From positions 10,027,201 through 10,091,200 of the forward strand of contig OZ199839.1 of assembly GCA_964304625.1 (NCBI GenBank): DNA of 64,000 bases, given 5' to 3'. A program made the translations under genes and the position numbers. This DNA comes from Kudoa neothunni (lineage: Eukaryota > Animalia > Cnidaria). Positions 6,095 through 37,445 of the stretch are shown here, piece by piece (the first letter of the stretch is position 1; each line of letters begins with the position of its first letter). The notes under the pieces are model-generated. The model saw nothing but the letters and a program-made list of their open reading frames with translations. It did no database searches and was not told the origin of the DNA.

Positions 6095-9000
6095 CTAAAT
6101 GTCAGAATGAGATCTGTTTGAAAACACATATTTTATAATGAAAGCCAAAATAATCACAAACGCGATTGGGATAATAATTGCGGGAATTATTAATCTAAAA
6201 AATAAACGTCAACTATTTATAAATTATTTTACCTTAATTTCCCCCTAAAAGATAATTAAGTTCAAATATAATAAAAATCGGAACTTTGTGTTCGATTTAA
6301 TTGGACCAGATTTTTCTGTGACATCATTCGATCCATGATCAAAATTTTCTGATTTTATCAATAACACAATGAATAACATTGTAATTGGGAAATAAGCAGT
6401 ACCTTCTTCATAAATAACTGTCGATCCACGTATATTTTCATCATCTGAGTAGTAGATTGTTAAATTATAGTTAAGATGGAGATAGCCTTGCAGGTTGGTA
6501 ATAGAAAACATTTCGCATAATGGCGTGCTTTCTCCGCAATCAGATTCATCATTCCAAACACATTGTTTCAGAATTATTGAGTTTTTTAATGATTTTATGG
6601 AACTAAGCTTCCAATAACACTTTTTATCTGTTCCTCTTATATTTTTGGGGAGTAGCGCCGTAACATTTAGTTGATTTGTATACCAGCGATGTATTATGTT
6701 AATTTTTTTTGAATCTACAATAAGAACATATTAGTTAAATAAATAAACGGTTATTAATCATTAACCCTTTCTTGTACTAATTTTGTCGTGCAGTATGAAT
6801 TGAATATATCGGATGAAAATGCTTAGTTAAACCGTTAAAAAAATTAGAACTCTCACGAAAATTTTAATCAGTTATTATATCAAATTACAGGAAAAATAGT
6901 AATTAAATATAAATTGTCTCCGAATGTACTATAACTACGTAAAAATTTCTAAAGCCCTAATAAAGTATTAAACACTTATTTTCTGTTTGATTTATAAAGA
7001 ATGGCTTAATATAATCAATATGCTTATATTAGGCATTTTATTTTGTGTATTCACGCCAATTTTGATGCCAAATTCTCATTTCGAAAACTATCCCGTATAT
7101 AAAGATATTTTTAGATGTTATATTTTAATATTGTCTTATAATAGATTTCCATTCCATACCTCTAAAGTATTTAACGTTAAAACTTATAATATTTTTATAC
7201 GAAAGATAGGGTTTTAGTATATGTTTTTTCTCGCAGATTATGTAGCTTATATAACGATAAAAAATTAAATAATGACGTATCAGACAATATATAAAAATAA
7301 TCCCTATATAACTTTTTGAGTTATATATGAATATTTGTAAATAAAAAAAATTATATTTTAATTTAATCATTTATGTGATATATCTCGATTATTCATATTA
7401 ATAAATTACATTGTTTAAAAGAAAATATTTCTGTTATATCTAATTTTATTCCGGTGTCATAATAAATGTAAATATTTTTATTTTTTTTTCAATTAGGTAA
7501 AAATCATTATAACATCTAAATTATTTTGGAAAAATATTTAAAACAGTTGATCGTGAAAATGTAAACATTTCTTCTTGTCATTTAAAATTTCAATTAAATT
7601 TGACAAGAAAAGGTTAAACATATATTTCATAACATTTAATTAACCTTGTGGAACTGTTATACATGTTGTTTCCGATAATTCTATTTGAGGCTTCACACAG
7701 ATCACAAATTCTTTTGAGCCATCAAAAGGGTCAACAAACTCCATGATATCGCAAGAAGGAGGCATTGTACATGAGCTTTTTATCTCATTTGGGATTTGTG
7801 TAAAGTTCCCATTGCTGTTTAATTTCGGTTTTAAAACTGACTCATTATCGACGCAAGAATATAGTAGTTTGTATCCTCCAATATGCTCAACAAAAACGGT
7901 ATAATAACAGATGAAATCTGAGGCTATTAAGCATGGGAAATCTCCATAAATCTGACATTTTTGGGTGCGATAGCCGTGATGAAACTTTAAACCGCATTCA
8001 ACTTATTATTAAACATATTAAGTATGAAATAAATAAAATTAATGTGTGGTACTTGGAACAATGGCGGCGTTGAAGTCCATATTTATTTGAATTTTAATTT
8101 TATAGTTCAAACTAGGAACAAGCCCAAAAATTTCATATTCCTTATGACATAATCCACGGCAAGATCGGAGACCCACACATGATGCTTCGTAGTACAAATC
8201 GATTTCCATTATGCTGATGTGATAGGTACAACTAAGACTATATCTTGGATTTGGCTTCTTTTCCAGGTTTCCTTTTATTTTGTATACACCTGGTCGTTTA
8301 CCTGGAGATAAAGTAAAATTTTTACTAATGTCATATCCTTCTATTATTTTAAATATTTTGTATTGAGAAGTGAATCATATCATTGTTACTTGTTTCAAAG
8401 TATACCTTTTCAACATGTAGAATATCGTTCTGGGTACCCAACCTGATAAATATTGAGTATTTTTCGCCCTCATATAAACCAGTTATTGTTATCGGAGAAC
8501 ATACCTGTTCGCAATTTATGCTTTCTTCGCAGTTATTTACATTACCAACAATTACATTAGGCGAATCTCCCCAATATACCGTTGAATTGCAAAAAATGTA
8601 TCCAGAAATTTTTCCATTAATTTGATATCTGAATAAAGATTTATCTAATACTATACTTGAGTTTGTTATATCCGAAATAAGCCCATGAGTAAACTTTTCT
8701 CTGTCCCAGAACGCTGTAAAATTAAAAGGTAACTTGATAGAGATAAAATAAAAAATACCAAATTTCTCCTCGATATATCCAGAATTTTCCACCTCCAAGT
8801 CATGATCCTTTGTTCTTATTCTCATTTGTACAATTGGAGACAAGTCATGATAAAGTCTAATATCTTTGCATGGTGCATAACATTCTTGGTTTATTTCGCT
8901 TCCGCCACAATCAGACTTATATTCATAATTGAGTATATTCGCAGATTTACCTCTAAGACTGAAATGACATATTTCTGCCGAAAAATCATTGGTGAAAGAA

Positions 9001-9812
9001 ATAATATATTGATTCCTCACAGATAAGGCTTTGTATGCCACATTGTATTGTGGTTTAAAAATTTCTATATTAGACTTCATGTATTTGTTCGGCATAAAGT
9101 AAAAATAATTAGGTTGATATGTACAATTTATTTCAAATTGGAGAAGGTAATTGTAAATTTCGTAAATATCAAAATAGAAACCTTCGTATACATCGTCACC
9201 TACCAATTTTTTCATTCCTCTTAGTGTATCACCATAATATAACACGCAATCACCAAAAAAATATGTTTTTGCTATAATGTTTATGAAATAACCTTCAAGT
9301 TCTAGAGTTACTTGAATATTGATCAAAATAGCTAAAACTTTATGAATAAGAAACTCAAGGCGTAATTCTTACGTTTTGGAAACCCAATTATAGTTGGTTT
9401 CATTTTATTCACTTCATCACCTGCCTTCCCAATTCTAACCATGGCATATCTCGATTTTGTTGAAAGGAAATAATAGGCGTATATTCCGGTTTCACAAGAA
9501 AAATTACAATAATTCTTTAATGGAGAGATATCTTGGGGTTGGTTACATGTTTTCGTTGAAGTGGTAATTTCATCTAGGACAATTATTGAAGCAAAACAAT
9601 ATTCGGTTTCATCTATCGCGCGTTTATAATTTAAGATTAACTTTGGTTTTTCAACGCTTGTATCAATTCCATATGTAATAATTCTAATTTCATCCTGAGA
9701 ACTCAGATAAAGAATCATGTAAATGATATCTTTGTTTGAGAAATTAAAAAATATATTTATTAAAACTTTTACATAAATAAGAACACGAGGTTTGACGAAT
9801 GGTGGGTTTCAT
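6095..9812 (-). CDS. Type I membrane protein with tandem 4-Cys FN3-like modules, paralog 1 (10 exons, about 800 aa)
   Basis: Spliced model with GT-AG introns at the same positions as paralogs 2 and 3. N-terminus MKPTIRQTSCSYLYIIYMILYLSS. FN3-like motifs ITITGLYEGEKYSIFI and FGLVPSLNYKIKI. 12-nt microexon at 6233-6244. TM LIIPAIIIPIAFVIILAFII, tail KYVFSNRSHSDI*. Confidence 0.85.
6765..7613. mobile_element. Non-autonomous piggyBac-type MITE in intron 6 of paralog 1
   Basis: TTAA|CCCTTTCTTGT ... ACAAGAAAAGG|TTAA. Removing it shrinks the 930-nt intron to 77 nt, close to the 82-nt homologous intron of paralog 2. Confidence 0.8.
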
Positions 9813-10117
9813 TGGGAAAATAATTTTTACGCTTCTCCAAATATTCGTTTTTACTCAAAATTTAAAATAATTAAGTAGATTAATATTTTATTAAGTAAAT
9901 GATATATTATCTATTTATTTCATCGTTCCCAATACTATTAATTAAAAATACTAAATATCAAATGTATAATTAAAAAATTATTAAATATCGGTAGATTAAG
10001 AGGTTTTCTGAGAGTTTATCTACAAAATACGTCGTCTGGTGCGTAAGTCGAATAGTATCGTAAATTTAATATTTTATTATTCTATTATTAGTTTCTATAA
10101 ACTGACATAATATTTAA

Positions 10118-12120
10118 CCCTCCCTTGATTTTGGGGTTTAATCTACCCCAATGTGATTTTAAAATTCATATATCTCCATATGTTGGAAATGATAGAATTT
10201 AAGATTCTATGAATTTCTGTAACATAAATTTCATTTTAATTTTAGACCAAAATATTTTTTAAATATTACATTAAAATATTTATTGCATGTTTATCTTTTA
10301 AAGTATTTTGGATAGAAATTACCCCATTCATTTTTTTCGTTTATATTGAAAAACGCGTTTAATTCTCGTATATATGTTTTTATTAGCACAATTGAAATAA
10401 ATTTACATCTCTCACGCTGTTTAATTGTGGTTTAATTTTCTTCAGTAATAATTCATCAACAATCAGTGTCATAATTTCATATTACATTTAGACTCATCCA
10501 TATAATTAAATATAGCGTTCAGCGCAAGAACATTAATTTTGAGGAATATTTATTTTGAACAATCTAACCAATTATTTGAAGAATGTATTGGTCAATAATA
10601 TTTGTAGCATTTAGGGCATCATCTTAAAGTTTTTTATAATTTTTTCGATAAAAAAAGCTCACATCGTGAATTTATGTTTACGGGTGGATCCTGATGAGAA
10701 AAGTTTGTTTTATTGAAGTTCCTTTTGGCCGATACATTAGAAGAATGTGTGACCAACCACGGATTATACAGTTGCACTGCGATTTTCTTTAGGAAGGTTC
10801 GTCTATTCTTTGATTCATAAAATATTTCACTATAAAATGCAAAAGCATTAACCGATAACAAGTCGATTATGTTTCATAATAAGACCAGAGGTTATCTCCT
10901 CTTAAATCGACGAACAGAAACCGTCGCGTGCATCCTGTCGACATCATCTACCCCGACCTTGGTTTTATTATAATCCAACATTAATTGTATAGATTGAACT
11001 TACGGTATTCCCAAGAAGCAGAGTTATCATACTTGCTGGAAGTTAGAAGAATAACAGATTTTCCTTTTTTACCACACGATAACAGAATTTATTTATCGCG
11101 AAACAACAAAATTCTGGAATAAAGTGGTCTTTTTCTTGAAGATTAACGACAAGATGATATCTCTTATTTTTCTCATTGTTCCCAAAAGGTCAACCTTCTT
11201 TCCAACGATTTATTCGCGAGAGACATCGATGAGAAGAAATTATCCGCGACAAAATTTAGGCAAGAATCAAACAAATGAGTTGTGAGGTTGAGTACGATGT
11301 TTTCACCTATATTAGCTTGTCTGTCCGTCTCAGCATTATTCTTTCCCAAGTAAACACTGGTATTACAGACGTAGTTGACGATTGAATCAACCAGTAGAAC
11401 AAATTTTATATCATATTTTGCCAGCTTCTTGGGCATATACTGGTTGGAGGACATGTTCATCGGAACGGAACCAATTGTTCATCCACAGTAATATCCTCGG
11501 TCGGAGCAAAACATTTAGGTAGCACGCCAATCCATTTCTCCCGTATATCACGAATGACACAGAATTTGTCCAAATTTTTACATTCTTCGCGTGTATTAAA
11601 ATTATCGAAACGTAATGATCGAGAAATATGTTTTAAGCGGCAAAGTGAAAATAATTGTGGATAGATTTCTCTTCCTTCGTTCCGGCTGATTAACTCAGTC
11701 AAAGGTTCCTCTCTAACCTTGTAGGTGGTCTTGAGGATTAACAATTCTAATTATCCTCCAAATTCTACCAAATCAAGATCGTACCATTGTTCACCGAAAT
11801 AATGTTTTCCAAGAAAAATGATATCGTTACTTGTTTCATTATTAAAAAATAATGAAAAACAGTCCAACATTTTTTTTATTTTGTTTGAGCATAACCAGGG
11901 GGTCCAGGAAATGGATACCTTTTATTCTCCGAACCTCTTTTGTTGGACTAGGCTTCGAAGTACCCCATCAAATACCACCTATACTCGTAAGAACATCGAT
12001 TCGGATGTCGATTATTTCTACTCGTTTAAAAATTCTTACTCGTCGTAAATGTGATCTTCACACTCACTTTCCGAAAAACAGAATTCATCGTACAAATTGT
12101 CTAAATCGCTAAATCCCATT
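10118..12120 (-). mobile_element. Decayed piggyBac element with frameshifted transposase
   Basis: TTAA|CCCTCC end at 10118. ORF pieces LRFDN...TVDEQLVPFR, YMPKKLAKYDIK, VADNFFSS, YNKTKVGVDDVD, NAF. The other terminus was not found. Confidence 0.85.
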
Positions 12121-12586
12121 ATTTAATATGGTAATGTTTATTATTATATTTGATCAATACGTGTTTATGTATTTTATTAAATATAATTCGTTCTTTTTGA
12201 ATACCTCTATATTTAAGTAAATTCAAAACTTGATCATAATATTAATTTTATTTAGCAATAATACTATGATTATTACAAGAGAACATTTCAGTTGTAATTT
12301 TTATGTGAATTTTATTGTTCAAAGTTAAAATTATATTAATTTTAATATTTTAAATTATTAATTGTTAGTATCTATATTTGGTTAATTTATTAATTATTTT
12401 TGAAAAAATTATTATGAAGGATATCAACGTTGTTAATTTTTTGTTTTTCTAGCCTAAATAATTCATTTCTAAACAATTAAAATTTATTAATATACATTTT
12501 AAACGTGATAATTAACTACCTTATTTATTTATATTAATAATATTACAATATAATTGGGAATACTATAAAGAAAAGTTACCTTAAAA

Positions 12587-12610
12587 TATATATATATATA
12601 TATATATATA
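12587..12610. repeat. (TA)12 microsatellite
   Basis: Read directly. Similar shorter (TA)n tracts lie near 28802, 33929, 54237 and 59045, and an (AAT)n tract at about 256-281. Confidence 0.9.
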
Positions 12611-13566
12611 CGTTTGGAAAGCATTAGCAGAAAATGTAGTCCAAGCCGCATACGTTTGACACGTTTGGGATTCGCATGCAAGAAAAATTAGCAACCACTA
12701 GTCAATAATTATAACAACCATTGAGATCACAAAATTAAGTTTAACATTATTATATTGAGATAATTAATAATTAATGTTAAGAACGATCTATTAATTTATT
12801 ATTATAATCATAATTCTAAATTATCTTTGTTTTTTTACGAGTTCCCGTGTGATGTACGCTTAGAGAGCAGACCATTCTCATTATATATATTTCTTTAAAC
12901 CCGATTAAATACACAATAATTATTGTCGAATTGTATTCATTTTTCCATTCAAACAAAATATATTCCGTCGAAATTAATTTTGATGAAAATTTAATAAAGC
13001 GACCAATGAGACCTATTATAAAATATTTATAATTTATTTGTCCAATAATCCAAGTTATTAACACATTAAAAACGAATATGTCATAGCTAGTAGGTATCCT
13101 TTCTAACTATAATAGATATAATTAGTAATATCACTATATCATTAATTATCAAATAATAATTTCAACGTTTGAATAAAAAAGTATTAATTTTAGCAAAGTG
13201 TATTATAAAGTAATATTTTAGTTTTTTATTGTTAAATAAAAATAATTATGAAGCCGCTGTCATTACAGACACAAAATGCAGGATTAAATGATTAAGAATA
13301 ATAAGAAGTATCTTCTAGGCGTGTCTAACTCATTATATTTAATTAGTGTTGAGGCCTTAATATTCTTTTCGTTAATTTTTGTCTAATATTTTGAAGACAA
13401 ATAGTGAGAGGTAATATCAATTTATTATTCATATAAATAAGAAATATGATTACTTTATTATATTGTTAAAGTATTATTTAATAAATAATTATTGTTTAGA
13501 AATACATTGATTTTATTGTTTTTCATACCAGTTGGAGAAATATTATATCTATATTCTTGAAGCATT

Positions 13567-16500
13567 ATGATGAATATTTTGATTTATTCAATGCTTATTG
13601 GCTATTTTAATAACATTTTAAACGAGAAATCTATAACTACAACTGTAATATAAATTATTTAACTGGTGAAATAACATTATATTTTAAGGATTTGCTGGTT
13701 TATCTCAATTTCACCAATTTCGTCATCAAGTCTTACTCATGTCATTCAGATGACTCTAAAATTTTTGGGGTGCATTGTCTTGAAATGCGAGAATTTTTCT
13801 GTTCTGGTACAAAATGTTCGTATCTCAGTTTATTCTAAAAATATTTATATAGACTTCAAAGAGGATGGTAATAATTCAAGAATAGAGATTGAAAACAACT
13901 GTTTGATCCAATTCTTTAGTCGAAATTCACTACCTAATCTTAAAATTACTATTCTAGTACCCCATAAATCACTCGAACCAAGGTAGAAGGTTATTTATTG
14001 CAATAATCAATTAAAATTAAATATACGCAGATTACATGAAGCATATTACAATTTTTACGGTGAGAAAATAGATCGTAGTGTATATATTGGAAATAATGTT
14101 TATCCAATACATTATTCAATGATGACCTTACCCGAAAAAATATTCTATCAATATATAGAATCAAATGGAGAATCGATCCAATTTACCCATGTATATAACC
14201 TCTAACAATAAAATGACTAATTTAATCTCTTTTAGTCACATCAAAAACTTCTTTGTAAATGTGTAATCTAAAATTTTACTATATTTAATGCTGGTGCTAA
14301 TATTAATATTTCATTCATTAACCTTCTAAGTAAAATGGAGTAGAGTTCTACCCCAAGTGAATTGTGCCAACAATATTATAATGTATAAATGGAACATAAC
14401 TCCTATCCACTTTTTGTAATCAATTTTCTTTATGAAAACTTTTAGAAAAATAAGTTGAAATTTTTTTTGTCATATTTTAAAAAAGTTAATGTAAAAACAC
14501 CTTCCAAATAAAATTAGTTAAAATATTGATACGAGTGATTTTTTTTAATTTACGGAATTTCTATCGAGTAAATAATGAATAAATAACGAAACATTATACA
14601 CGCGATGTCAACCCACATGTACAACATCGATAAAAACGTGCCGTTCTCTCCAGAATACAACGATGGCTCCTCATTCTCTCAATATTTTTATACCAGCAAA
14701 TCAAAATACGATAAATCCATCAGTTTGCTTATTTCTACGTTGTAGAGATAATTCAAAAACATATAATGGAATTGTTCAATATTTTGACATGTTTTGTGTT
14801 TTCGGTGCAGTTTTACACTGCGTTGTTTAAAATAAGATATATTAATTAGTGTCTGACATAACACTTGAATTAAATAATAAAACTAAAAACCCGCAGAAAT
14901 ACACCTATAAATACAATCATACTCCATACAAATGTAACAACATAAAAATGCGCATACGAGCATAGAATATTACTCAGGCGCGTGCCGTCCGGGTCATGGT
15001 ATGGTATGCAGTACATACCCTGGAATATGATGGATGAGAAAATTTTTATACCTGCATTGCAGGGTCTAACATGAAAATTAATAGGATAACACCAATTCAA
15101 AAATAAATACTGTGTGTATTAATGAAATACGTAAACAGAAAAATAGTTTGCATTTATCTCAATATTAGTTTAAATATATAAATTAGAATCAATATAAGTA
15201 GAATATTAGTCAAAATTAATAAAATCTGAATCAAGAATAGTCAAAAATAACTCGACATAGAGTAATTTTCATGGATCCAGGTGTGTAAGGCAATGGCAAA
15301 TTAAAGCCTGCGATGCTTGATTTGCCAACTTCCAATATAGTTGATTAATAAATATTCAATTGTGAGTGTATAATATACATATTATTAAAAATATATAAAT
15401 AAATTAAAAATTTTCAAATATTTAGGTCAAGGTAGGCAGAGGTCACGGCTGCCTCCTATATAAAACACACGTTGATACCCGTACTTACACATGCGGTGCG
15501 ATTCCGCGCACCTCTATTTTTTGTACTAGCTAGGCTATGAAAACTAAATTCAACATAACCTGTGTATTCACGTGACAACATGCAGTAACGGAAACCGATT
15601 TTCATCTCTCATACTTGAAATTATAACTATTTTTTGAATTATTAAATATTTAAATCATAATCAGTGCCTACGTGGTGCTAAAATTAGGTAATTTTTCAGA
15701 GAGGATGCGAGTTACATATACATTATCCCTATTCTGATTATCTGTTGAAGTGTTTTATGATTTTATCACGTTCTTTTCGAACTTGAATAGTCACTATTTC
15801 AAACAGTTTTCAAAATTCCCCTATGAAGAAAAGATGAGAATCATAACAAATAGTAGACCAACACCAAAGCTCTGCGAACTTAAACAACAGAAAGGAGATA
15901 AAATTACTCGTACCTTTCATGGTGTATGGTACGAGAGGAAATAATGGTTGTATAGACGTACTACAACAAAAAACTTTGTTATGTTCCTTACTTGTTATTT
16001 TCGGCACCTAATGAAAATATCTGGGTGAAAGAAAGATATTCTACTTTGAATAACTTGACTAACGTTTTGAATAAACATGAGCGATCTATAAAACATTATG
16101 ACAACCAAATATTACTGAAAAGTTTGGAACAACCTGAATTGATTTTCTATTTGACACAGAAGAATTTGAGCATTGAAATTCAAAATAAAAAAGTCGAAGA
16201 CGGCCGGAAAATATTGGAAAAATTTTCCCCATATAATTATGGTTTCTTAAATTTGATTAAACGAGGTCACAGCGTTAAAATTAAATAATTGGTAGAATAA
16301 AAGTAAGTTTCTCAATTAACATAAAAACGATGGCTATAAATAATTGAATTTTTGATAAAAATATCTCGAAAATAATTTGGAACTTTAAAATACGGTTCGT
16401 TTATTTAACATAACGAAATTTTGTTGATTAATACATGTCCTGTTGATAAAAAATCATTTTTATTGTTTTAAAATCAATTAATTCTCTAGATAATTATACA

Positions 16501-18518: not shown

Positions 18519-18659
18519 AATCTGCGAAACCATCTCTTTGAACCAATGCTACGTTAAAATGCCATTAATTATCAATCTACTAATAATATATTACATTATT
18601 CGGTTATATTCTATTATATATGACATTAGTCGAAATTTTTTTTTCATAATGTAGCTACA

Positions 18660-21889: not shown

Positions 21890-24739
21890 TTATATAATCG
21901 AAATTCTATTTGATTTTGGTTTTCTTCCACATTGAAATATTATAGTAGCTGCAATAATACCGATTAAAACCAGTAAGGAGATAACCACAACGGTTATTAT
22001 TATTCTAAAAATTTAATCAAATTTACTACAAAAAAAAATCTACTTGGTCTTATTATTGTTTCTAAAATAAAATTAGATAACCTAAAATATTAAACAAAAA
22101 TACGATATAGAATCAAAAGTAACAATTGTATCATCTATTAGATAATCAAATAAGAATTAAACGGATATAACAAAATCTACCTGCTCTAAACAACGTAAAA
22201 CCATTAATATCAACGTTTTCTTTGTAGTAAACCGTTAAATTGTTCAATAAACCAAACTCTTTGATATTTCTAATAGAAAATTTATTGCATGTAGGGACAC
22301 CGTTCACACAATTCGAATTGTTCGATTTAGTACAATGCCCTATTACTGACCAACTATTTTTTCGGAAGGTTTTTAGCACCCAGTAACAGTTTGCAGCCGG
22401 AGACTTAATTTTTTTGGGAAGAATGGCAGAAACAGTTAATTGAGTTTTATCCCATAACGCGATTACATTGATTTTTTGGGGGTCTAGAAAAAATATTTAA
22501 AAAATAATATTTGTTTATAATCAAATATTAAAGTAATATTTGTAATAATTGAAATTTATAAAAACCTTGTGGAATCGTAAGACATGATGTTTCAGAGACG
22601 TCAAAGATTGATTTCACGCAGATAAGATACTCCATAGATCGATTTAAGGGATCCAAAAATTCAATGCTATCACACGCAGGAGATGTTTTACAAGACATTA
22701 TTGTTGCATGTGCGTTAGATAGAATTCTGAAGTCGCTTTCGTTTGTAGGTTTAACAATTTTATTATCATTATGGCAAATATAATTCGGTTTGAAACCACC
22801 AATATATTCTTCAAAAATGGTATATTCACACTGAAAATCTAATTTAGATTTGTATGCCACTTTTGCGTGGATTTTTATGTTAAAACCTTCGTAACTGTAT
22901 TGAAGCTCTAAGGTACCATCAACTAAAACATTTTATTTAATCCTTTAACATAAATAATTTATTTTAAATACTTGGTAATATTATTGGATCGTAATCAGAA
23001 TCAACATAAACTTTGATTTTATATTTGGCAGTAGGATAAATTCCTCTAAGAACATAATTCTTATTGCACAGCCCACGACAAGAACGATGACCATCACAGT
23101 TTGCTTCGTAGAATAAATCGCTTTCCATTTGACTTACATAGAAAACGCAAGTATATCCCTTCGCTCTATCGTTCTTAACACTAATATTTCCTCTTAGTTT
23201 AATTATTTTTGGTTCATCTACGGGTAAAATTGCAATTTGTCGACTAAAATCAACTCCAGCTATCAGTTTAAAATATTAGTAAAATCATTATTGAAAAATT
23301 TACCTGTTCGAAATGTAACTTTTTCGGTGTGCCGCATACTTCCGCCATTACTTAAATCAATCATTACGAGGTATAATATTCCGGGTTCCAAGCGTTCAAT
23401 CGTTATCTGAGTGCATAATATGTCACAATTTGTCTCCTCATCACAGATAATTTGTGCCGAAACTTTTGTCATCGGAATGTCACCTCGGTACATATTTGTA
23501 TTACAACTATCATAAATAGGACTGTCTGTTTGAGTAGGATTGTTAAATTGTGAATTATCGAGAGAAACGCTTCTTTTGGAAATTTTTGAAACTATACCTC
23601 CAAAGGTATTATCAGCAGCTACAAATACTAAATAAAATATATTTTAATTAAATAATGAGGTTAAAAGTTAATACCAAATTTTTTATCAATAAAACCAGAA
23701 CCTATTATTTGTCGGTTATGATGTCTTGTTGTTATTCTTATTTCGACAATAGGATATAAATCGTAATAAAGTCCAACCGTTCTACAGGGAGAGTAGCATT
23801 CCTTTCCTATATAACTCCCGCCACAATCAGATGTGTATTCTGTAGGTTTTTCCCCAGACACGTAATTAGCTCTTATACTGAAGTGACAAATATCAGCAGA
23901 AAAATTATTCTCAAATGATAGGAGGTAAACATATTTTCGATCCACAGCTTTATAAACCACACTATACTGTGGTCTATACATTTCTATATTAGCCCGAATG
24001 TATTGGTTCGGCATATAATAATAGAAACTAGGTTTGTTTGAGCATTTAACCTCAAAATGTTCGATCAATAAATAGATCTCCACATGATGATACAGTTCAT
24101 CTTTGTGGGCATTAGAAGTATCAGATTTTTTCATATTCTCAACTTTATCGTTGTAATGTATTTCACAGTTACCAATTTCGTGTGTATCTGTGGTGACCAA
24201 AATATATATGTAATGATGTTCGATAGTTGTTCTCACCTTTAAATCGAACAAAATTGCTATAATAATTTTGAATACTTTATTTCTATAATTATTACAGACT
24301 TACGTGTCTCAAAACCAATTATATGCAAGCTTTCATCTGAACTTGTGTCACCTTCTGAAATTCTAACTGAGGCGTATTTTGAGTTCTTATCAACAAATTT
24401 ATATGCATATATTCCACTATCACATGTGAAATTGCAATAATTATGCGGGGAAATATCTTCCACCAATAAACATGTTCGTTCGCTACTGAGAATTTCGTCT
24501 GGAACAAGTATAGAACTCCAGCATTGTTCATTTGCTCCTGTGGAGCTAGTCACATTGAGTGTAATTTTAGGAGGAGATACTTCATGGTTAATATCATAGG
24601 TGAATTTTCTTGAATTAGCATCAAAACTGTTGCAACACGTTTGAGCGATGATATCTTTATATTATTAAACAAATCAGAGCAATATTTATTATATATTACA
24701 AATAATAATAGTAAATGTATGATAATTAATAATTTTCAT
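21890..24739 (-). CDS. Type I membrane protein with tandem 4-Cys FN3-like modules, paralog 2 (802 aa, 10 exons)
   Basis: Exons 24739-24700, 24654-24304, 24256-23675, 23627-23304, 23259-22972, 22922-22566, 22483-22181, 22134-22104, 22061-22044, 22004-21890 (2409 nt, open). Signal-like MKIINYHTFTIIIYIIAQTCCNS. FN3 motifs ITIERLEPGILYLVMI and YVLRGIYPTAKYKIKV. TM IIITVVVISLLVLIGIIAATIIF, tail QCGRKPKSNRISII*. Confidence 0.9.
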
Positions 24740-26339: not shown

Positions 26340-27150
26340 TATAGCTTGGGATTGTACTTCGATTTTTATTTGTTATAGAGCGATATTTTTTTAGTTCCCC
26401 CATGTTGATTCAACCTTATTTGTGTGGACTTCTTGAAGCGAAACAAAGTTGTTCTTGTGAATAACAGTGTAATGGATGAAACCTAAATCTTCAAGTCTTG
26501 TAACCAGCCCAACCATCAGTCCAAATGATAGATCGGGCTTCAACATTATTTAATATAATGTCTTCTAGAACTTGGCGATTTCGATATCGTGAAAGTTTAA
26601 GAAAACAGTTACCATTTTCATTTATTCCTCCGATCACCCAAAATTTTTGATTTTTCAGAATTCGACCAACATCATGTTTCTTATACGTCTGACAGTTTCG
26701 TCTATTTGAACAACAACATCGTTCCCACCAAATCTGTAAAATTCTTCATTCAACTTTAAAAACATGTTGTCGACGATTATTTTTTCAAATTTAGAATAGT
26801 AGAATATGAAGAAATGTCCAAATGCCTCGCTAAATCCCCATAAGTCATGGTTGGATGTTGAAAAATTATAACATATAACTATCAGCAGAAATAACTTTCA
26901 TATAGGAAGTTTTGAGAGCTCGAGAATTGTTCTATTTCTTATAGACACCCGTTTTTTGTAATGGTTGCGTTTTAACTGATATTTGAAATTTATATCACTG
27001 CGAGATATCAATTTTAATTTCCCGCCGCAATTACATGATCGATTTAACTTTATATAACCTAAATTTTCTAAAACATTAATTGTATATTTTCGATTATCAC
27101 GAAAATAGTCATTATCTAAAATTGTGATTCTATCAAATGTTCCAAACTCA
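26340..27150 (-). pseudogene. Merlin (ISXO2-like) transposase remnant
   Basis: Minus-strand pieces CNCGGKLKL...SIRNRTILELSKLP, FGGNDVVVQIDET, WVIGGINENG, WTDGW, HTNKVESTWG. Confidence 0.8.
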
Positions 27151-29367: not shown

Positions 29368-30694
29368 CTAGCGCTCATGCCTAGCTCTGCCTGGCATTAT
29401 GTGATGGAAAATTTTAACTTTTAGTTTTGTTTTTGAATGGAGAAATTCTACCTAAGATTTAACTTAATTATCGCGTTAAACCCTGTAAATTTTATTTTTC
29501 TCTTTTAATTGTTGCAGTTTAAAGCTTGTCATTATTTTTGTAATGTGAATATTTAGAAAAAAAAATTATGCGCGCACTTACCATTCAAATATAAACAGAG
29601 GTATTATGGGAAGTTAATGAATATTTTTAAGTATATTTTACAAATTTTTAACAAAAAATATAATGAACTTAATTTTATGAGCGATGTAATTAACGATTAA
29701 GGTTCATTTATTTATTAAACTAACTCATTAAGTAACTTAAATAGGACTTTCAGTTCTTTTCAAAATTTTGCGATAATAATTAATTCCCCTAGTTATAAAA
29801 TTTATTATTAGTCTACAAACGATAAAATAAATAAAACTGACCTAGGATGCTTTAGAAATAAAAATATTAATTGTTACTCCTTTTTTGTAATTTTATAAAG
29901 GATGTTTTAAAAAGCTGTAAGTGGTAACTTACGTATTCATTATTTTAACATAATATCCCCCTTTTTAAATAAATGAAACCTTTCTTATTAGCAAAAATAC
30001 TTACTGGTTCAAATATATACGACTTCAATTAACAAAATACGATTAAATCTAAAATCTAAAATGTAAAGGTGTTAGTGGTTAGTGGTTAGAAAAATTCCAG
30101 TAATGCTTAAATATCAAATGGTTTTCTCTATGGAGTGTATCCTTTTTTAAAAAGTACTGTTTGATTGTCCTTAAAAAATTTCGTTTTCTTGGATTATACC
30201 TAGATGTACATAATCACTTTCGCATAAATATATCCATAACACTTGAAAAGTGAAAATATATCCTAAATAATTTGGTTTTGCTTCAAATTTTAAGAGAATA
30301 TAACAACTCTTGTAAATGTGACTTGAATAGTTTTATTTGTCTTAAAATTAATACAAACGACATACAAAACATTTTATGTCATATTTAACAGACTCTCTTT
30401 GTGTATAATGAGTAAAAGTTCATTCTAATTGACTATCACTCCAAAGTAAACAAACATCAATATTATGAAGGTACTTTTTAAGCTGCTATTTGAGTTGACA
30501 ATCACAATATTCCTTACTTCTGACTGCGATATTGATCATATTTCTACTTCTAAGTGAATGAACTATTTTTCCTAATGGTATCATCTATCCAAAGACAAAT
30601 TAAAAGCTGTATTTAGAAATGTTTCTCCATGTCACATGCGTAATGTTGCAAACACACGCACTGACTGACATACGAACTTTAAATATATATTAGA
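29368..30694 (-). mobile_element. Non-autonomous Helitron-like element
   Basis: Minus-strand 5' A|TCTAATATATAT (30694) next to a CA/GT-rich tract. 3' GC-rich hairpin-like segment followed by CTAG|T (29368). Confidence 0.5.
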
Positions 30695-33114
30695 TCTATG
30701 AGAAATTTTAAGAGGAATCAAAAAAGTATTTTCTTAGACTCATTAATTTCTGTCGATATATTCAACACCTAGAATAACCTTTAAAGTTTAACAAACAAAC
30801 ATATTCTCTCTATTTTAAAGGTGTAACATTAAATTAATTTAATAAGATTTCGACAGGGGCCACGGAAAAGCTCATCGTGAGTCGGTGTTTGTGCACCCTT
30901 GATCTAGATAATTTATCGACCGTGAATGCAGATTGCATTTTGGCCATGAAGTAATGTAATTAATATTTTAATAGATATACATGGTACCACTGTATATAAA
31001 AATGACTTTAAAAAATGAAAAATAACATATATTAATCGATAAATTAGAAAAAATAATATACCATTCTATTTTGGACTAAAAATGGTGTGGAGGTAATAAT
31101 TCACGATGAACTTTAAAACTATCACACAAAATCACATTCTTAACCAAATACACTTACAAACACATGTTATTTGGAGAAAAGCGTACGAAATCCTAATGAA
31201 GGAAATTCTAGATTTTCGCTTAACATATTCTTATTCGTTTCTTTGTGCTTGTGTTCATTTTCGATCGATTAGATTTTAACTTGATGATCGTTCAAATTTA
31301 ATCGATAAAAATTAGGGTTTCCCCGATACCAATAAAATTTCTTTTTTTATAACCAGTATCTAATGAAGAATAATGTGTCAAATTACATTAAAATGTATCA
31401 AAATATCTTTAAATTTGTTCATTAAAATTATTCTTATATTTTTATAAATCTTTACGCATTTCTCTATTGAATAGTACAAAAAACATATTAGGTTTGCAAT
31501 ATTCATTAGGCCTGTCAACAAAATATCGGGTAATGGTAACGTATGCGGCACCTAAAAAACGTCCTCTTTCGAATGTTTTTTCGAAATTGTTTTTTCACGA
31601 TTATTGATAATAATATAAAAGAATATGGATAGAAAAAATTCAGCTAAAAATAATAACTTTAAAATTTTGAGAATTTTTCATCTGAAAGAGGTCGAATACG
31701 CGTGTAATCTACATCTTTTTTTCAACAAAAATTGAATTTATCTCTAATTTATGTGGATAAGCGTTTATAAATTTGTTCTTTCGCATATTGTTTACCGTAT
31801 AAATACAAATTGTACAATATCAAATTTAATTATACAGGTTTTTATAGGGTTTAAGCATGAATAGTTTAAAAACGAGAAGACAATTACGTGCTCTTAAAAT
31901 ATATTTTCTTAATTTGTGTGGAGTTGATGAGTATTTTTATTAATTAATCAACATTGTATTATCAACCAATATTGAATTTCAATAGAGAAATAACTTAAGA
32001 TTTATTATAGTAAGTTATCACTTTTTAAGAGGAATTCTTACATGTATGTTAAGTATAGCATTCGATAAACGTAAAAATGTAGTTATACAAAAAATAAAAC
32101 AGAAAAAATTGTTATTTCTATAAAAATATTAGTTTTAATGAATTATATATGTACTGATAAAATAATGACCTAAATTAACATATTGTGTTATCATTTTAAA
32201 TTCTCTCAATTATTATATTGGGCCTAAATTTTTTTAAGAAATTTTGGTATATAAAAAAACTTTCTAAATAATAAAAATACAGTTTCAAATTTTTCTTTCA
32301 ATTTTTTATACATATTTAAAGGTAAAGGAATTAATATAATCATTTTTAAAAATTAGGTTCCTGAATTTTAATAATATAAATTGAATAATTTCTTAATTTC
32401 TAATAAAAAATTTAATCAAAAAAAGTAGAAACTAAAACAAACTATACTACATTAATTTCATTATTTAAAATATCACAAAGTATTTTTATTAATGTGAAAA
32501 ATGGGACGTTTTTGTGAAATTTGAAAAAAGTTTATTTTTAAAGTTATTTTATATAAAATTGTTACATATCAATAATAAAAATTTTAAATAGTAATAATAA
32601 ATAATTAATGAGTTAATAACTAAGAAAAAAACGGAATAATTCAATATTTGTTGATAAAAACACATTAAAGTTTATTCGGGGACAAAGAATATTAATTTGA
32701 GAAATGAAAACTAAGTTTCTTGTGTTTTCTTCATCTCTATTATTTTTTATCCCTTAGAAAGTTAGTGGTGCACGCATTTTCCGTGCCGTTCCAGAATTCG
32801 ACCTTAAAAAACCGCTGGGCCAAAAAATAAAGTATTACATAGCTCTTTAAGGGAATTTTAATTCGGGAATGGAAATAAATATGACAATCACCTTAAATTA
32901 TTTAGCGTTGGTGTCATAACAAAAAATTGTTAATTCGAAACCAGAATTAATACACTCTTGCACAGAAATGATCATGATTTAAATTTCGAATTCATAATCG
33001 ACAAAGTATGATGCTTACAAAAAATTTAGTTTCACTGCTTCAATAAATCAATTTGAAATATAATATTTTTTCGAATGTTATAGAGAAATGTCTTTATGCA
33101 AAATCTTCCCCAAT

Positions 33115-33137
33115 CAAAGCTGGGCAGTTCGCACCAG
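33115..33137 (+). repeat. Helitron-like 3' terminus related to the end at 664
   Basis: AAGCTGGGCAGTTCGC is the reverse complement of the hairpin segment at 668-683, followed by ACCAG|T. Confidence 0.5.
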
Positions 33138-34586
33138 TATCTTATAAAAATATGGCATGCGAACAATTTAATTATCTGATAAAATATATTTCACGTGGTT
33201 TGATGTGTTTATGAATGAAAGTATCAATCTCGCGCAAAATATTTATTTTACCTTACTAAGTTAACTAGTTATCCATGAGATGGATATCAAAACATTTGAG
33301 GAAATTAATATTTTACCGACCGATAATACAATCAATTGGGTTCCCTTATTAAGTAAAATCGGTAAATATTAGAGAAATAAAACTTTTTTGAATGACTAAA
33401 AATCTTGACGTAATCTCATTAGAATACAACGAACGTCTAAAACAATTGAAATTTAAAATGTGGACATGCGTAGAACATGGTATCGGAATGGGTATCGATA
33501 TCGGCGACTATTGAAATTTGGAGTACTCGTACTAGTTTTAAAAAATGTGGTATAGGTGCAACCTTAATAAAAATATTAGGTTTACACTTGATATTATCCT
33601 ATCATCATAAGAGGAATTTGTCAATCCTTTCCAGCCCAACGTTCACTTATAATCTAAATAAACAAGAGAAAAGATTACGATGCAATGGCGCTGTTTATTA
33701 AATATTCGTTCCAAAATAATTTTAAAATGTTATAGTTATTTTCGTATATTTAATAACGAGTTGAAAATTATTTTAACGAACTGTATTAAAAGAATACAGA
33801 ATAAAAAACTTGATATAACGTCATTTTAAACAATTTAATGTGATTTATCTTATTTACATTTATTATTATTACATATTCCATATGATATTATTGCTCAAAT
33901 ATAATTTTTCAACATTTAAATTGATTCATATATATATATATATATCTGAAAAGATGGAAAATTGATATAAGCTATTAATTTTGTGTATTATCTAGTTAAT
34001 CATTATTTCATTATGAATAATTATAATATATATACAATTCAGAAAAAAAATATATATTCTAATATTTAATTAGTTGTACGAAAATATTCAGAGCTTTTGC
34101 TTTCAATATTTTTAGATTTGGAATTGTTTGGAAAATGAGAAGTTGATATCAAAATTGGTGTGCATATACAAAATAATTGATCGATGTAAGCGTATTGATT
34201 ATATTGAGCCTTTATTCTCAATCAATAAACAGCATGAATATTCATTCCATATTAAAGACATCGTAAAATTTTAGCACTCTTTTTATACATGAAACTAGGA
34301 TTTTTTTTAATTTTTAGTTTTCCCTGTTATTTACTGTTAATGACTGGAAAAAATTGTCAAGAAATTTTTAACTTACAAATAGTTATAATTTACAGTTTTT
34401 AAGCATTATATTTTCTTTAGATCTCAAAAAAATATTTAGGCATAAAAGGATTAATATGCGTGAAAATGCGTCGCCAGTGTGTGGTTAAACAGAAAATTAG
34501 ATTTTAAGATTTTATTAAAACTAATTCATTTTAATATCAAAAAAATAAGCATAGAAAATTTCGATTGTATCTAAATATTTAAATAA

Positions 34587-34701
34587 TTAGATAATCAGGA
34601 AATTTCTTAGATTTCAGTTATATCGAATAATTATAACTGCTTAGCTGGAATAACGCTAATGGTAACCAATAATGAATAACTCCATTGCGATAATTATTGT
34701 T
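34587..34701 (-). pseudogene. Decayed transmembrane/tail exon of paralog 3
   Basis: Same length (115 nt) and similar ending (ATT ATC TAA vs ATT ATA TAA) as exon 10 of paralog 2, but with compensating frameshifts and in-frame TAG, TAA and TGA. The TM remnant LLVTISVIPA is out of frame. Confidence 0.75.
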
Positions 34702-34745
34702 CTAAATTATTAATTAAATTTTTTCCAACCAGAAATATACTTGAT

Positions 34746-37445
34746 TTAATCATCGTTGCTAAACAATCGGATAAATAACTCAAAATATTAAAAAATTACT
34801 AATTAGGGTCTATAATAAGAAGTTGATCTTCCACTAAATTATCAAATTAAAATTGATTAGATACAGTAAAATGTACTTATTCTAAATAATGTAAAACCAT
34901 TAATATCAACATTTTCTTTGTAGTAAACTGTGAAATTATACATGAACCCGACTTCATTGATGTTGCCAATGGAAATATTATTACATCTCGGGACAACATG
35001 CTCACAATTCAAATCGTTTGATTTAGTACACTGCCCTTTTATAAACCAACTATCTTTTCGTACGATTCTCATCTTCCAATAACATGTTGCTTCAGGAGAG
35101 ATAATTGCTTTGGGGAGTATGGCAGACACAGTTAGTTGGTTATTATTCCATAAAGGTATTACATTTATTTTTTTGGTATCTAGAAAAAATTTTTAAAAAA
35201 TAATAAATTATAATACTTGTTAATAATAAAATATTAAAGTAATATTCGTGATAATAGAAATTTATGAAAACCTTGTGGAATCGTGAGACATGTTGTTTCC
35301 GAGACATCAAAGATTGATTTCACGCAGATAAGATACTCCTTAGATGGATCCAAAAGATCGGTCAATTCGACGCTATCACACCTTGGAAGCCAACAGCATG
35401 AATTGATTATTTCATCTGTAGTAGAAAGTATGTGAAAATTGCTGGAGTTATTTGGTTTAATAATTTGTTCATTATTAAAGCAGGTAGTGAATAATTTGAA
35501 ACCACCTATATATTCTTCAAAAATGGTATATTCACACTGAAAATCTAATTTAGATTTGTATGCCACTTTTGCGTGGATTTTTATGTTAAAACCTTCGTAA
35601 CTGTATTGAAGCTCTAAGGTACCATCAACTAAAACATTTTATTTAATCCCTTAATATAAATAAATTATTTTAAATACTTGGTAATATTATTGGATCGTAA
35701 TCAGAATCAACATAAACTTTGATTTTATATTTGGCAGTAGGATAAATTCCTCTAAGAATATAATTCTTATTGCACAGCCCACGACAAGAACGATGACCAT
35801 CACAGTTTGCTTCGTAGAATAAATCGCTTTCCGTTAGACTTACATAGAAAGCGCAAGTATACCTCCTTGTTGTGTCTTTCAGATCAAAGATATGCCCCAA
35901 TAGATTAATCTTATTTGGTATTTCTACGGGTAAAATTATAATTTGTCGACTAAAATCAACTCCAGCTATCAGTTTAAAATATTAGTAAAATCGTTATTGA
36001 AAAATTTACCTGTTCGAAATGTAACTTTTTCGGTGTGCCGCATACTTCCGCCATTACTTAAATCAATCAATACGAGGTATAATATTCCGGGTTCCAAACG
36101 TTCAATCGTTATCTGAGTGCATAATGTGTCACAATTTGTCTCCTCATCACAGGAAACTTCAGCTGAAACTATTGCCATCCGAGTATCACCTCGGTATACA
36201 TTTGTAAAACATCTGTCATAAATAGGGCTGTCTCTTTGAATAGGATTGCTAAATTGTGAATTATCGAGAGAAACGCTTCTTTTGGAAATTTTTGAAACTA
36301 TACCTCCAAAGGTATTATCAGCAGCTACAAATACTAAATAAAATATATTTTAATTAAATAATGAGGTTAAAAGTTAATACCAAATTTTTTATCAATAAAA
36401 CCAGAACCTATTATTTGTCGGTTATGATGTCTTGTTGTTATTCTTATTTCGACAATAGGATATAAATCGTAATAAAGTCCAACCGTTCTACAGGGAGAGT
36501 AGCATTCCTTTCCTATATAACTCCCGCCACAATCAGATGTGTATTCTGTAGGTTTTTCCCCAGACGCGTAATTAGCTCTTATACTGAAGTGACAAATATC
36601 AGCAGAAAAATTATTCTCAAATGATAGGAGGTAAACATATTTTCCATCCACAGCTTTATAAGCCACACTATACTGTGGTCTATACATTTCTATATTAGCC
36701 CGCATGTATTGGTTCGGCATGTAATAATAGAAACTAGGTTTGTTTGTGCATTTAACTTCAAAATGTTCGATCAAAAAATTGATCTCAACATGATAATACA
36801 GTTCATCTTCATAGGCACTAGGAGTACCAGATTTTTTCATTTTCTCAATTTTATCTTTGTAATGTATTTCACAGTTGCCTATTTCACGTGTACCTGTGGT
36901 TACAGATACAAATATGGAATTTTGGACAAACATTGTCGTGACCAATAAATCGAACAAAATTGCTATAATAATTTTGAATACTTTATTTCTATAATTATTA
37001 CAGACTTACGTGTCTCAAAACCAATTATATGCAAGCTTTCATCTGAACTTGTGTCACCTTCTGAAATTCTAACTAAGGCGTATTTTGAGTTCTTATCAAC
37101 AAATTTATATGCATATATTCCACTATCACATGTGAAATTGCAATAATTATGCGGGGAAATATCTCCCACCAATAAGCATGTTCTTCCAAAACTGAGAATT
37201 TCGTCTGGAACAAGTATAGAACTCCAGCATTGTTCATTTGCTCCTGTGGAGCTAGTCACATTGAGTGTAATTTTAGGAGGAGATACTTCATGGTTAATAT
37301 CATAGGTGAATTTTCTTGAATTAGCATCAAAACTGTTGCAACACGTTTGAGCGATGATATCTTTATATTATTAAACAAATCAGAGCAATATTTATTATAT
37401 ATTACAAATAATAATAGTAAATGTATGATAATTAATAATTTTCAT
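34746..37445 (-). CDS. Paralog 3: intact 4-Cys FN3-like ectodomain, predicted secreted (no TM)
   Basis: Same exon layout as paralog 2, and ectodomain exons are open. The 18-nt microexon 34741-34758 reads C AAC GAT GAT TAA, ending the protein at ...DPNYNDD* before the TM exon. Confidence 0.85.

What the first reader, a model, noticed from the sequence alone, without database searches (positions are those of the whole stretch)
6095..37445. Tandem cluster of three unrecognised surface proteins built from a four-cysteine FN3-like module
Seen: three co-oriented 10-exon paralogs, each with a signal-like leader and about 7 extracellular modules on symmetric phase-1 exons. Five modules share C-x16-20-C-x5-11-C-x3-6-C (a sixth has a longer insert). 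Two of them carry a clear FN3 E-F strand signature (L-x-P-x3-Y-x-V/I). Canonical FN3 domains normally lack such a disulfide set. Inference: a lineage-specific receptor/adhesin family, and a candidate variable surface or recognition system. It is conceptually similar to Hydractinia Alr allorecognition genes (clustered, polymorphic, Cys-containing FN3-like region) or parasite variant surface antigens. I do not recognise a named homolog.
Basis: partly seen in the sequence, partly recalled or inferred. Interest (0 to 1): 0.85.

Follow-up and report, generated by a model that had tools for sequence, protein, structure and literature searches.

The report
Kudoa FN3-fold surface-protein gene cluster
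Three neighbouring genes of the tuna-muscle parasite Kudoa neothunni encode membrane-anchored (one apparently secreted) proteins built from seven disulfide-stapled FN3/Ig-fold modules; they belong to an undescribed family of at least 138 genes that is most likely the parasite's host-facing surface repertoire.

Summary
Three co-oriented minus-strand paralogs lie at 6095-9812, 21890-24739 and about 34700-37445. Each has a 40-nt leader exon and six phase-1/phase-1 exons that carry seven modules. Two short exons and a TM exon follow in g1 and g2; in g3 these last exons have decayed.

The genome is Kudoa neothunni, a myxozoan (parasitic cnidarian). AlphaFold2 models modules 2-4 with confidence. Foldseek and VIA-align match them to tandem FN3 domains, with module 2 closer to Ig constant domains. 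Neither Pfam nor PDB sequence profiles recognise them. Module 1 could not be modelled well.

The three genes are the end of a co-oriented array of at least nine. A family profile finds at least 138 genes on all three chromosomes, and that count is a lower bound. Outside this genome only unannotated fragments turned up. The papers I searched do not describe the family. This scan had already noted the same family in other windows of this genome.

The surface or host-interface role is inferred. No RNA data could be obtained. Programmed antigenic variation and Alr-like allorecognition are not supported.

The parts
6095..9812 (-). Gene g1, 10 exons. E1 9812-9773 (leader), E2 9729-9373 (M1), E3 9331-8759 (M2+M3), E4 8713-8390 (M4), E5 8340-8053 (M5), E6 8001-7645 (M6), E7 6714-6403 (M7), E8 6348-6285, E9 6244-6233, E10 6194-6095 (TM, 12-aa tail, stop).
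   Evidence: Splice model with phases and GT/AG sites. Each of E2-E7 is hit by its family HMM at E 2e-26 to 3e-68. No RNA support.
8714..8758 (-). In-frame, stop-free 45-nt intron between g1 E3 and E4. It makes the region read as a single 339-aa ORF.
   Evidence: GTATTT..TTACAG borders. The intron-encoded residues 192-207 overlap the only stretch of the model with pLDDT below 50 (198-212). g2 and g3 have stops at the same place.
21890..24739 (-). Gene g2, 10 exons. E1 24739-24700, E2 24654-24304 (M1), E3 24256-23675 (M2+M3), E4 23627-23304 (M4), E5 23259-22972 (M5), E6 22922-22566 (M6), E7 22483-22181 (M7), E8 22134-22104, E9 22061-22044, E10 22004-21890 (TM, 14-aa tail, stop).
34700..37445 (-). 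Gene g3. E1 37445-37406, E2 37360-37010, E3 36962-36381, E4 36333-36010, E5 35965-35678, E6 35628-35272, E7 35179-34877 are all open. Read by eye, the E8-like 34-nt exon is followed by a microexon with an in-frame TAA. The TM-exon homolog (about 34700-34650) ends after 14 codons. g3 is therefore a soluble ectodomain or a decaying copy.
   Evidence: g3 is 87% identical in DNA to g2 over 3.3 kb.
24117..24242 (-). Largest g2/g3 divergence patch, in the N-terminal half of M2. The g3 counterpart is 36823-36948. Further patches lie at 24455-24490 (M1), 23437-23544 (M4) and 23125-23235 (M5).
   Evidence: Mismatch map. Patches have dS 0.39 and dN 0.25; the rest has dS 0.02; introns 1-4 differ at 1 of 183 nt. 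No third copy of the E3 or E5 patch exists in the genome.

Best explanation
These are three real protein-coding genes of the myxozoan Kudoa neothunni.

Shown from sequence and models:
- Each product has a signal peptide split over a 40-nt leader exon and the start of exon 2.
- Seven homologous beta-sandwich modules of the FN3/Ig fold follow.
- In g1 and g2 the protein ends in one TM helix and a basic cytoplasmic tail of 12-14 aa with no signalling domain.
- Each module keeps four cysteines: one on strand C and three in a long C'-E loop.

Inferred:
- Co-loss patterns among paralogs indicate two nested disulfides, C1-C4 and C2-C3. These would staple the loop and probably harden the module in a hostile extracellular setting.

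Shown about the family:
- The genes arose by tandem duplication and belong to a sequence-orphan family of at least 138 genes.
- The membrane-distal module M1 is the most diverged. The M2-M3 pair is the most conserved.

Inferred function:
- The proteins form a rod-like coat or adhesin layer on the parasite surface that meets host tissue.
- The many paralogs offer different binding or antigenic surfaces.
- Soluble copies such as g3 may be shed forms or decaying genes.

g2 and g3:
- They are old duplicates; dS is about 0.4-0.7 in exons 6-7.
- Their 5' halves, introns included, have recently been homogenised, most simply by gene conversion between the two.
- Four intra-exon patches still hold the old divergence.
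For: Organism: 40.26 Mb in three chromosomes plus a contig of exactly 18,219 bp. This matches the K. neothunni assembly in PMC12239612.

Gene models: phase-1 exons and short GT..AG introns conserved across three genes and across diverged paralogs.

Signal peptide: leader exons of 17 of 23 paralogs read like MKTNMVSFSLLVALF.

Anchor: a TM exon with a short basic tail is present in 12 of 12 paralogs that have enough flank.

Fold:
- AF2 on a 62-row paralog alignment gives pLDDT 82.4 and pTM 0.71, all-beta.
- Foldseek top hits are contactin FN1-FN3, fibronectin 12-14, L1CAM and Tie2, at E down to 4e-7.
- VIA-align gives M4 Z 9.1, rmsd 2.2 A over 81 residues against fibronectin FN3, and M2 Z about 8 against Ig constant domains.
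- The ESM Atlas search returns multi-FN3 proteins.

Modules are homologous to each other: the E4 HMM hits E5 exons at 1e-13 to 1e-15, and the E7 HMM hits E5 and E6.

Cysteines: the framework is kept in 21-35 paralogs per module. Losses are mostly in pairs: CxxC three times, and C1+C4 together in L025 M3 and L027 M4.

Family size: 138 matches were scored out of 669 candidates, and the weakest scored match had E 6e-70.

Purifying selection: dN/dS is 0.31-0.41 where dS is 0.45-0.66.

Mosaic of g2 and g3.

Local subfamily: shown in the tree.
Against:
- Surface location and host contact are inferred from signal peptide and TM features only.
- M1 modelled poorly (pLDDT 61) and had no fold match. M5-M7 were not modelled.
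- Disulfide pairing is inferred from co-loss. I could not read model coordinates.
- The assembly came from low-coverage contaminant reads in a tuna data set, so tandem copy structure could hold errors.
- The strongly conserved M2-M3 pair argues for a shared, non-variable function that I cannot name.
Confidence: 0.6

Rival explanations
1. The family is a programmed antigenic-variation system. One or a few of the hundreds of genes are expressed at a time, and switching lets the parasite escape fish antibodies, as with Giardia VSPs or Plasmodium var/rif.
For: - The family is very large, with at least 138 genes.
- Members are type I proteins with a very short conserved basic tail.
- The distal module is the most diverged, at 21% median identity.
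- g2 and g3 keep discrete diverged patches inside otherwise homogenised sequence.
- Comparable claims exist for other families in the myxozoan Sphaerospora molnari.
Against: - There are no expression data at all.
- Patch dN/dS is 0.63, not above 1.
- I saw no dedicated expression site, telomeric placement or switching element.
- The arrays are ordinary co-oriented tandem genes, each with its own upstream region.
- Kudoa plasmodia grow inside muscle fibres, where antibody pressure may be low (my own knowledge, not tested here).
Confidence: 0.12
2. The proteins serve the parasite's own architecture. They would act in adhesion between the nested cells of the plasmodium and sporoblast, or as structural components of spore valves or the matrix, and not in host contact.
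For: - Tandem FN3 rods are typical of cell-adhesion and matrix proteins.
- The M2-M3 pair is strongly conserved, with motifs such as PSFFY-MPN-YM and CYAPC in nearly all paralogs. This fits a common partner.
- The proteins have no signalling tail.
Against: - A housekeeping adhesion role does not need more than 138 diverging paralogs, or secreted variants.
- The family is absent, or undetectable, in the other annotated myxozoans and cnidarians held in a library of 1.84 billion proteins.
Confidence: 0.2
3. It is an allorecognition system like Hydractinia Alr1/Alr2. Polymorphic ectodomains would bind homophilically to tell self from non-self.
For: The organism is a cnidarian, and the genes are clustered type I membrane genes with Ig/FN3-fold domains.
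Against: - No sequence relation to any cnidarian protein was found.
- The tails are 12-14 aa without ITAM/ITIM-type motifs.
- No allelic data exist.
- Myxozoans are not colonial animals that fuse (my own knowledge).
- The family is far larger than the Alr complex.
Confidence: 0.03
4. The copies are mostly non-functional: a decaying repeat or pseudogene family, or cargo of a mobile element, kept open only by recent duplication and gene conversion.
For: - g3 has lost its TM exon.
- Some paralogs carry several stops.
- 45.6% of the genome was classed as repeats and masked before annotation.
- Transposase remnants lie between the genes.
Against: - Open exons, splice sites, phases, signal peptides, TM exons and the Cys framework are all kept at only 21-38% identity.
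- dN/dS is 0.3-0.4 in the unhomogenised exons.
- Relatives in other samples are also open.
Confidence: 0.05

Closest known systems
Tandem FN3 ectodomains of animal adhesion molecules (fibronectin, contactins, L1CAM, tenascin, Tie2)
   Same: - Same beta-sandwich fold, arranged as a string of modules.
- Tyrosine-corner-like L-x-P-x3-Y-x-V motif on strands E-F.
- One module per symmetric phase-1 exon.
- Type I membrane topology.
   Different: - No Pfam fn3 match at threshold.
- Four conserved Cys per module in a long C'-E loop.
- No Ig, EGF, kinase or phosphatase parts.
- Very short tail.
- More than 138 paralogs in a 40-Mb genome.
Parasite multigene surface families (Giardia VSP; Plasmodium var/rif/stevor; the VSP- and RIFIN/STEVOR-like families reported in Sphaerospora molnari, bioRxiv 10.64898/2026.02.11.705288)
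   Same: - Hundreds of clustered paralogs in a parasite.
- Cys-rich ectodomain, single TM helix and very short basic tail.
- Paralog diversity.
   Different: - Different fold, with no sequence relation.
- No evidence of exclusive expression or switching.
- The host is a metazoan parasite.
- The strongly conserved M2-M3 pair is unlike a purely variable coat.
Hydractinia Alr1/Alr2 allorecognition genes
   Same: Cnidarian, clustered type I membrane genes with Ig-like-fold ectodomains.
   Different: - No homology detected.
- No signalling motifs in the tail.
- No polymorphism data.
- Very different family size and organism biology.
Class I cytokine-receptor homology module (FN3 domain with four conserved Cys, WSXWS in the next domain)
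   Same: An FN3 fold that carries two conserved disulfides. gp130, OSMR and IL-7R appear among the structural matches.
   Different: - The Cys positions and spacing differ.
- No WSXWS occurs in any exon I read.
- No box motifs or long tail.
- The structural matches are no better than those to any other FN3.

Membership tests
Fibronectin type III fold (structural class) | Seven-strand Greek-key beta-sandwich of about 90-100 residues | tested here: met
   Modules 2-4 of g1:
- AF2 pLDDT 82.4.
- Foldseek matches three-FN3 fragments at E 4e-7.
- VIA-align gives M4 Z 9.1, rmsd 2.2 A, 81 residues aligned to fibronectin FN3; M2 is nearer Ig constant domains, Z about 8.

M1 is inconclusive (pLDDT 61, no match). 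M5-M7 were not modelled. They are linked only by HMM cross-hits and shared motifs.
Pfam fn3 (PF00041) sequence family | Score at or above the Pfam gathering threshold (25 bits) | tested here: not met
   - No fn3 hit on 10 exon translations, even at E 10.
- Of 62 family members, one reached fn3 at E 0.08, and three had sub-threshold FN3-like hits.
- The family profile hits four bacterial multi-FN3 proteins only at E 1e-6 to 2e-5, in the E-F region.
Pfam fn3 (PF00041) sequence family | E-F strand signature L-x-P-x3-Y-x-V/I (tyrosine corner) | tested here: met
   Present in M4 and M5 of g2 and g3. In g1 it is strict only in M5; g1 M4 reads L-x-E. In the family consensus it also appears in M1 (LSPRTKY-YV) and, loosely, in M6 and M7.
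   There is no Pfam, PDB or library match of that kind. The reading frame ends 12-14 aa after the TM helix. Only stray sub-threshold Dep-1 Fn3-like hits appeared.
Hydractinia Alr family | Sequence relation to Alr ectodomains | tested here: not met
   The profile search of 1.84 billion representatives returned no annotated cnidarian protein.
Hydractinia Alr family | Cytoplasmic tail with ITAM/ITIM-like motifs | tested here: not met
   The tails are KYVFSNRSHSDI (g1) and QCGRKPKSNRISII (g2). Other paralogs end in 3-15 mostly basic residues.
Hydractinia Alr family | High allelic polymorphism and homophilic binding | not testable with these tools
   Only one assembly is available, and there are no population or binding data.
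Parasite variant surface antigen systems | Large clustered multigene family of surface-exposed proteins | tested here: met
   At least 138 genes lie in tandem arrays on three chromosomes. Signal peptide and TM features are present. Surface exposure itself is inferred.
Parasite variant surface antigen systems | Mutually exclusive expression and switching | not testable with these tools
Parasite variant surface antigen systems | Diversifying selection on exposed parts (dN/dS above 1) | tested here: not met
   Between g2 and g3 the patches have dN/dS 0.63, the rest 0.83 at very low divergence, and E5 alone 1.12. This is one pair only, so the test is weak.
Class I cytokine receptor homology module | WSXWS motif and the canonical Cys spacing | tested here: not met
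   The exon translations contain no WSXWS. The Cys spacing is C-x16-20-C-x5-12-C-x3-6-C.

The most novel reading that the evidence does not exclude
The family is a true variable surface repertoire of a metazoan parasite. Hundreds of FN3-fold coat genes would be expressed selectively. Gene conversion would keep the scaffolds uniform, while selection keeps discrete binding or antigenic patches different. This would give Kudoa a new kind of immune-evasion or host-recognition system, built on a disulfide-stapled FN3 scaffold.
Probability: 0.15. Interest if true: 0.85.

Novelty: new variant of a known kind. Interest (0 to 1): 0.6.

Why it matters
Myxozoans are economically important fish parasites, and K. 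neothunni is linked to spoilage of tuna flesh. Almost nothing is known about their surface molecules or how they deal with the host.

The published annotation predicts 5,316 proteins. It was made from protein hints on a repeat-masked genome. A family of at least 138 sequence-orphan surface-protein genes would therefore be one of the largest gene families in the genome. It was probably missed or counted among 'unclassified repeats'.

The family offers concrete candidates for the host interface, for diagnostics or vaccine antigens, and for testing whether a metazoan parasite uses a large variable coat family. It also adds a disulfide-stapled variant to the FN3 fold.

Tried and rejected
- Pfam on every large exon gave nothing. 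Pfam on 62 family members gave only stray sub-threshold FN3-like hits.
- A PDB sequence-profile search gave nothing below E 0.37.
- The search for homologous proteins with the 339-aa ORF gave nothing. Its length filter would exclude full-length kin.
- The protein-atlas feature search gave no usable hit.
I therefore did not use read laying, and no splice site is confirmed by RNA.
- I tried a degenerate DNA pattern for the CYAPC motif to count copies. 
- I tested gene conversion from a third paralog as the source of the g2/g3 patches. Neither the E3 nor the E5 patch has any other copy in the assembly, so I rejected this for those patches.
- I rejected positive selection as the cause of the patches. 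Their dS (0.39) is as high as in the unhomogenised exons.
- The M1 model was too poor to classify.
- I did not build, search or fold any joined (spliced) protein. Everything was done exon by exon by reference. The one multi-module model uses g1's natural open frame, which reads through an in-frame intron.
- Locus L044 contains a withheld stretch of N.
Full report
**What is there**

The window is AT-rich (about 28% GC). Its minus strand holds three sets of long open segments in the same order. From those segments and the raw sequence I built splice models.

- g1 spans 6095-9812 and g2 spans 21890-24739. Each has ten exons.
- g3 runs from 37445 down to about 34700. It has the first seven exons intact.
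- Exon 1 is 40 nt (ATG plus 37 nt, ending in phase 1).
- Exons 2-7 are all phase 1 to phase 1 and carry seven modules. Exon 3 carries two.
- A 64- or 31-nt exon shifts the phase to 2. A 12- or 18-nt microexon keeps it.
- The last exon encodes a TM helix and a tail of 12-14 aa.
- Introns are 38-54 nt with GT..AG ends. The exceptions are one of 930 nt in g1, which holds a dispersed repeat, and one of 82/92 nt.
- In g3 the microexon has an in-frame stop and the TM exon is cut short (read by eye). g3 would give a soluble ectodomain or is decaying.
- A family-HMM scan finds exactly these three genes in the window.

The Cys spacings are as stated. M1, M3, M4, M5 and M7 fit C-x16-20-C-x5-12-C-x3-6-C. 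M6 has an x27 insert. M2 has two Cys in these genes.

L-x-P-x3-Y-x-V/I is present in M4 and M5 of g2 and g3. In g1 the strict form is found only in M5.

**Which organism**

The assembly has 40,260,978 bases in four contigs of 17.15, 12.04 and 11.05 Mb plus 18,219 bp. The Kudoa neothunni assembly recovered from yellowfin tuna data is described as 40.2 Mb, N50 12.0 Mb, three chromosomes, and a mitochondrial contig of exactly 18,219 bp, with a median intron of 49 bp (PMC12239612).

The genes are therefore those of a myxozoan, a parasitic cnidarian of fish muscle.

**Family and context**

The 339-aa open frame of g1 matched at least 119 places in the genome. A profile of 62 paralog pieces had 669 first-look candidates. 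138 of them were scored, and the weakest still had E 6e-70. So 138 genes on all three chromosomes is a lower bound.

Diverged paralogs keep the same exon order and module set.
- A leader exon encodes classical signal-peptide starts in 17 of 23 loci examined.
- A TM exon with a short basic tail is present in 12 of 12 loci with enough flank.

The window's genes end a co-oriented array of at least nine genes at C2 9.965-10.064 Mb. In a tree of exon 3, g1 is sister to the gene just outside the window. g2 and g3 are sisters. The local array forms one long-branched subfamily.

Median pairwise identity per module is 21% for M1, 38% for M2-M3, 27% for M4, 32% for M5, 24% for M6 and 32% for M7. HMMs of one module type hit other module types. 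The ectodomain is therefore built from one ancestral module.

**Fold**

g1 happens to read through its 45-nt exon 3-4 intron in frame, so window:8391-9332:- gives M2, M3 and M4 in one natural open frame.

With the 62-row alignment, AlphaFold2 gave pLDDT 82.4 and pTM 0.71, all-beta. The only stretch below 50 (198-212) falls on the intron-encoded residues. That is a useful internal check of the splice model.

- Foldseek against the PDB returns three-domain FN3 fragments: contactin FN1-FN3 at E 4e-7, then fibronectin 12-14, L1CAM, Tie2 and gp130.
- VIA-align gives M4 Z 9.1, rmsd 2.2 A over 81 residues against fibronectin FN3 domains. It gives M2 Z about 8 against Ig constant domains.
- The ESM Atlas search gives tenascin, gp130-like and OSMR clusters.
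- M1 modelled poorly (pLDDT 61) and matched nothing. Its strand order and the family consensus LSPRTKY-YV suggest the same fold, but this is not shown.
- M5-M7 were not modelled.

**No sequence-level membership**

- Pfam finds nothing on the exons and only stray sub-threshold FN3-type hits among 62 members.
- A PDB sequence-profile search finds nothing.
- The profile search of 1.84 billion representatives found 33 proteins.
  - Most are short unannotated ORF fragments. The four traced come from one ENA assembly and two Logan runs.
  - They are 26-71% identical to K. neothunni paralogs, presumably from related parasites.
  - Four bacterial multi-FN3 proteins match weakly, in the E-F region of M4 only.

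**Cysteines**

The four Cys columns are kept in 32/35 (M1), 34/35 (M4), 34/34 (M5), 21/21 (M6) and 30/31 (M7) paralogs.

- Losses come mostly in pairs. C2+C3 are lost together three times. C1+C4 are lost together in M3 of L025 and in M4 of L027.
- I infer two nested disulfides, C1-C4 and C2-C3.
- In the model, C1 lies on strand C and C2-C4 lie in a roughly 20-residue C'-E loop just before strand E.
- I could not read coordinates, so the pairing is an inference.

**g2 versus g3**

- Overall DNA identity is 87%.
- Introns 1-3 are 100% identical and intron 4 differs at 1 of 44 nt.
- Exons 3-5 differ at 7-11% of bases.
- The differences sit in four patches. Inside the patches dS is 0.39 and dN is 0.25. 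Outside them dS is 0.02.
- Exons 6-7 have dS 0.45-0.66 with dN/dS 0.31-0.41.
- The E3 and E5 patches have no third copy in the genome.

The simplest reading is that g2 and g3 are old duplicates. Their 5' halves were recently homogenised, by conversion between the two. The patches kept the old divergence. This is not recent positive selection, and the patches were not imported from another paralog.

Two explanations remain open. Selection may protect the patches, or mismatches may stop conversion there. The patches fall in the family's variable segments, namely the N-terminal parts of M2, M4 and M5.

**How it most likely works**

Shown:
- The genes have conserved splice architecture.
- The products have a signal peptide, seven FN3/Ig-type modules with a fixed Cys frame, a TM helix and a short tail.
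- The family is huge and organised in tandem.
- Purifying selection acts on the unhomogenised exons.

Inferred:
- The proteins stand on the parasite surface as rods.
- Disulfide-stapled loops give them stability.
- The diverged paralogs present different surfaces to host tissue.

I put this at about 0.6. The rivals are a parasite-internal adhesion or structural role (0.2), true antigenic variation (0.12), decaying repeats (0.05) and Alr-like allorecognition (0.03).

**Known or new**

The genome paper does not mention gene families, fibronectin or surface proteins. It annotated a repeat-masked genome from protein hints only, predicting 5,316 proteins and classing 45.6% as repeats, mostly 'Unclassified' or DNA elements. 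The family was probably missed or masked, though I did not check this.

Searches for myxozoan FN3 or Kudoa surface families found nothing relevant. A 2026 preprint reports other expanded membrane families in Sphaerospora molnari.

The fold and the general idea of an expanded parasite surface family are known. The family itself, its Cys-stapled module and its size appear undescribed. This scan has already noted and partly followed up the same family in other windows of this genome. This window is therefore one more locus of that family, not its first sighting.

**Limits**

- There are no RNA data.
- The assembly derives from low-coverage parasite reads within host data.

Noticed in passing
window 8714-8758; loci L021-L034: The intron between exons 3 and 4 is in frame and free of stops in g1 and in at least 14 other paralogs. 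Some paralogs have open frames of 440-476 aa that span two such introns. Retaining these introns would only add linkers of about 15 aa.
   Followed up: partly
window 60543-60905 (-): An exon matches the T-box DNA-binding domain (Pfam PF00907, E 4.8e-10). Long N/Q-rich open frames at 61282-63130 (-) have no Pfam hit.
   Followed up: partly
window 11176-11750 (-), 46772-47074 (+), 55756-56342 (-): Transposase remnants lie between and beside the genes. They are piggyBac-type DDE_Tnp_1_7 (E 4e-11), ISXO2-like (E 1.3e-9) and weak Tc1/mariner-type HTH hits.
   Followed up: partly
window 6715-7644 (g1 intron 6); also 58694-59001 and 34105-34374: The only long intron of the three genes (930 nt) contains a dispersed repeat that is 70-76% identical to two other places in the window.
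   Followed up: no
L054:6350-6910 and L056:4890-5490 (C2 about 9.83-9.85 Mb): In paralogs of another array, module 6 carries a long S/T/P/N-rich, mucin-like insert inside the module.
   Followed up: no
L041, L042 (Logan run SRR33849685); L065 (Logan run SRR33529766): Relatives from other samples read through module boundaries where K. neothunni has introns: M1 to M2 in P0003, and two modules in P0020. These are either intron-poor genes of another species or spliced RNA. The source organism is unknown.
   Followed up: partly
L043 (C4:1-10000): The 18.2-kb mitochondrial contig has 43% GC against about 28% in the nuclear window. It has no Rfam rRNA hit and only doubtful tRNA calls, which fits the extreme divergence reported for Kudoa mitochondria.
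   Followed up: partly
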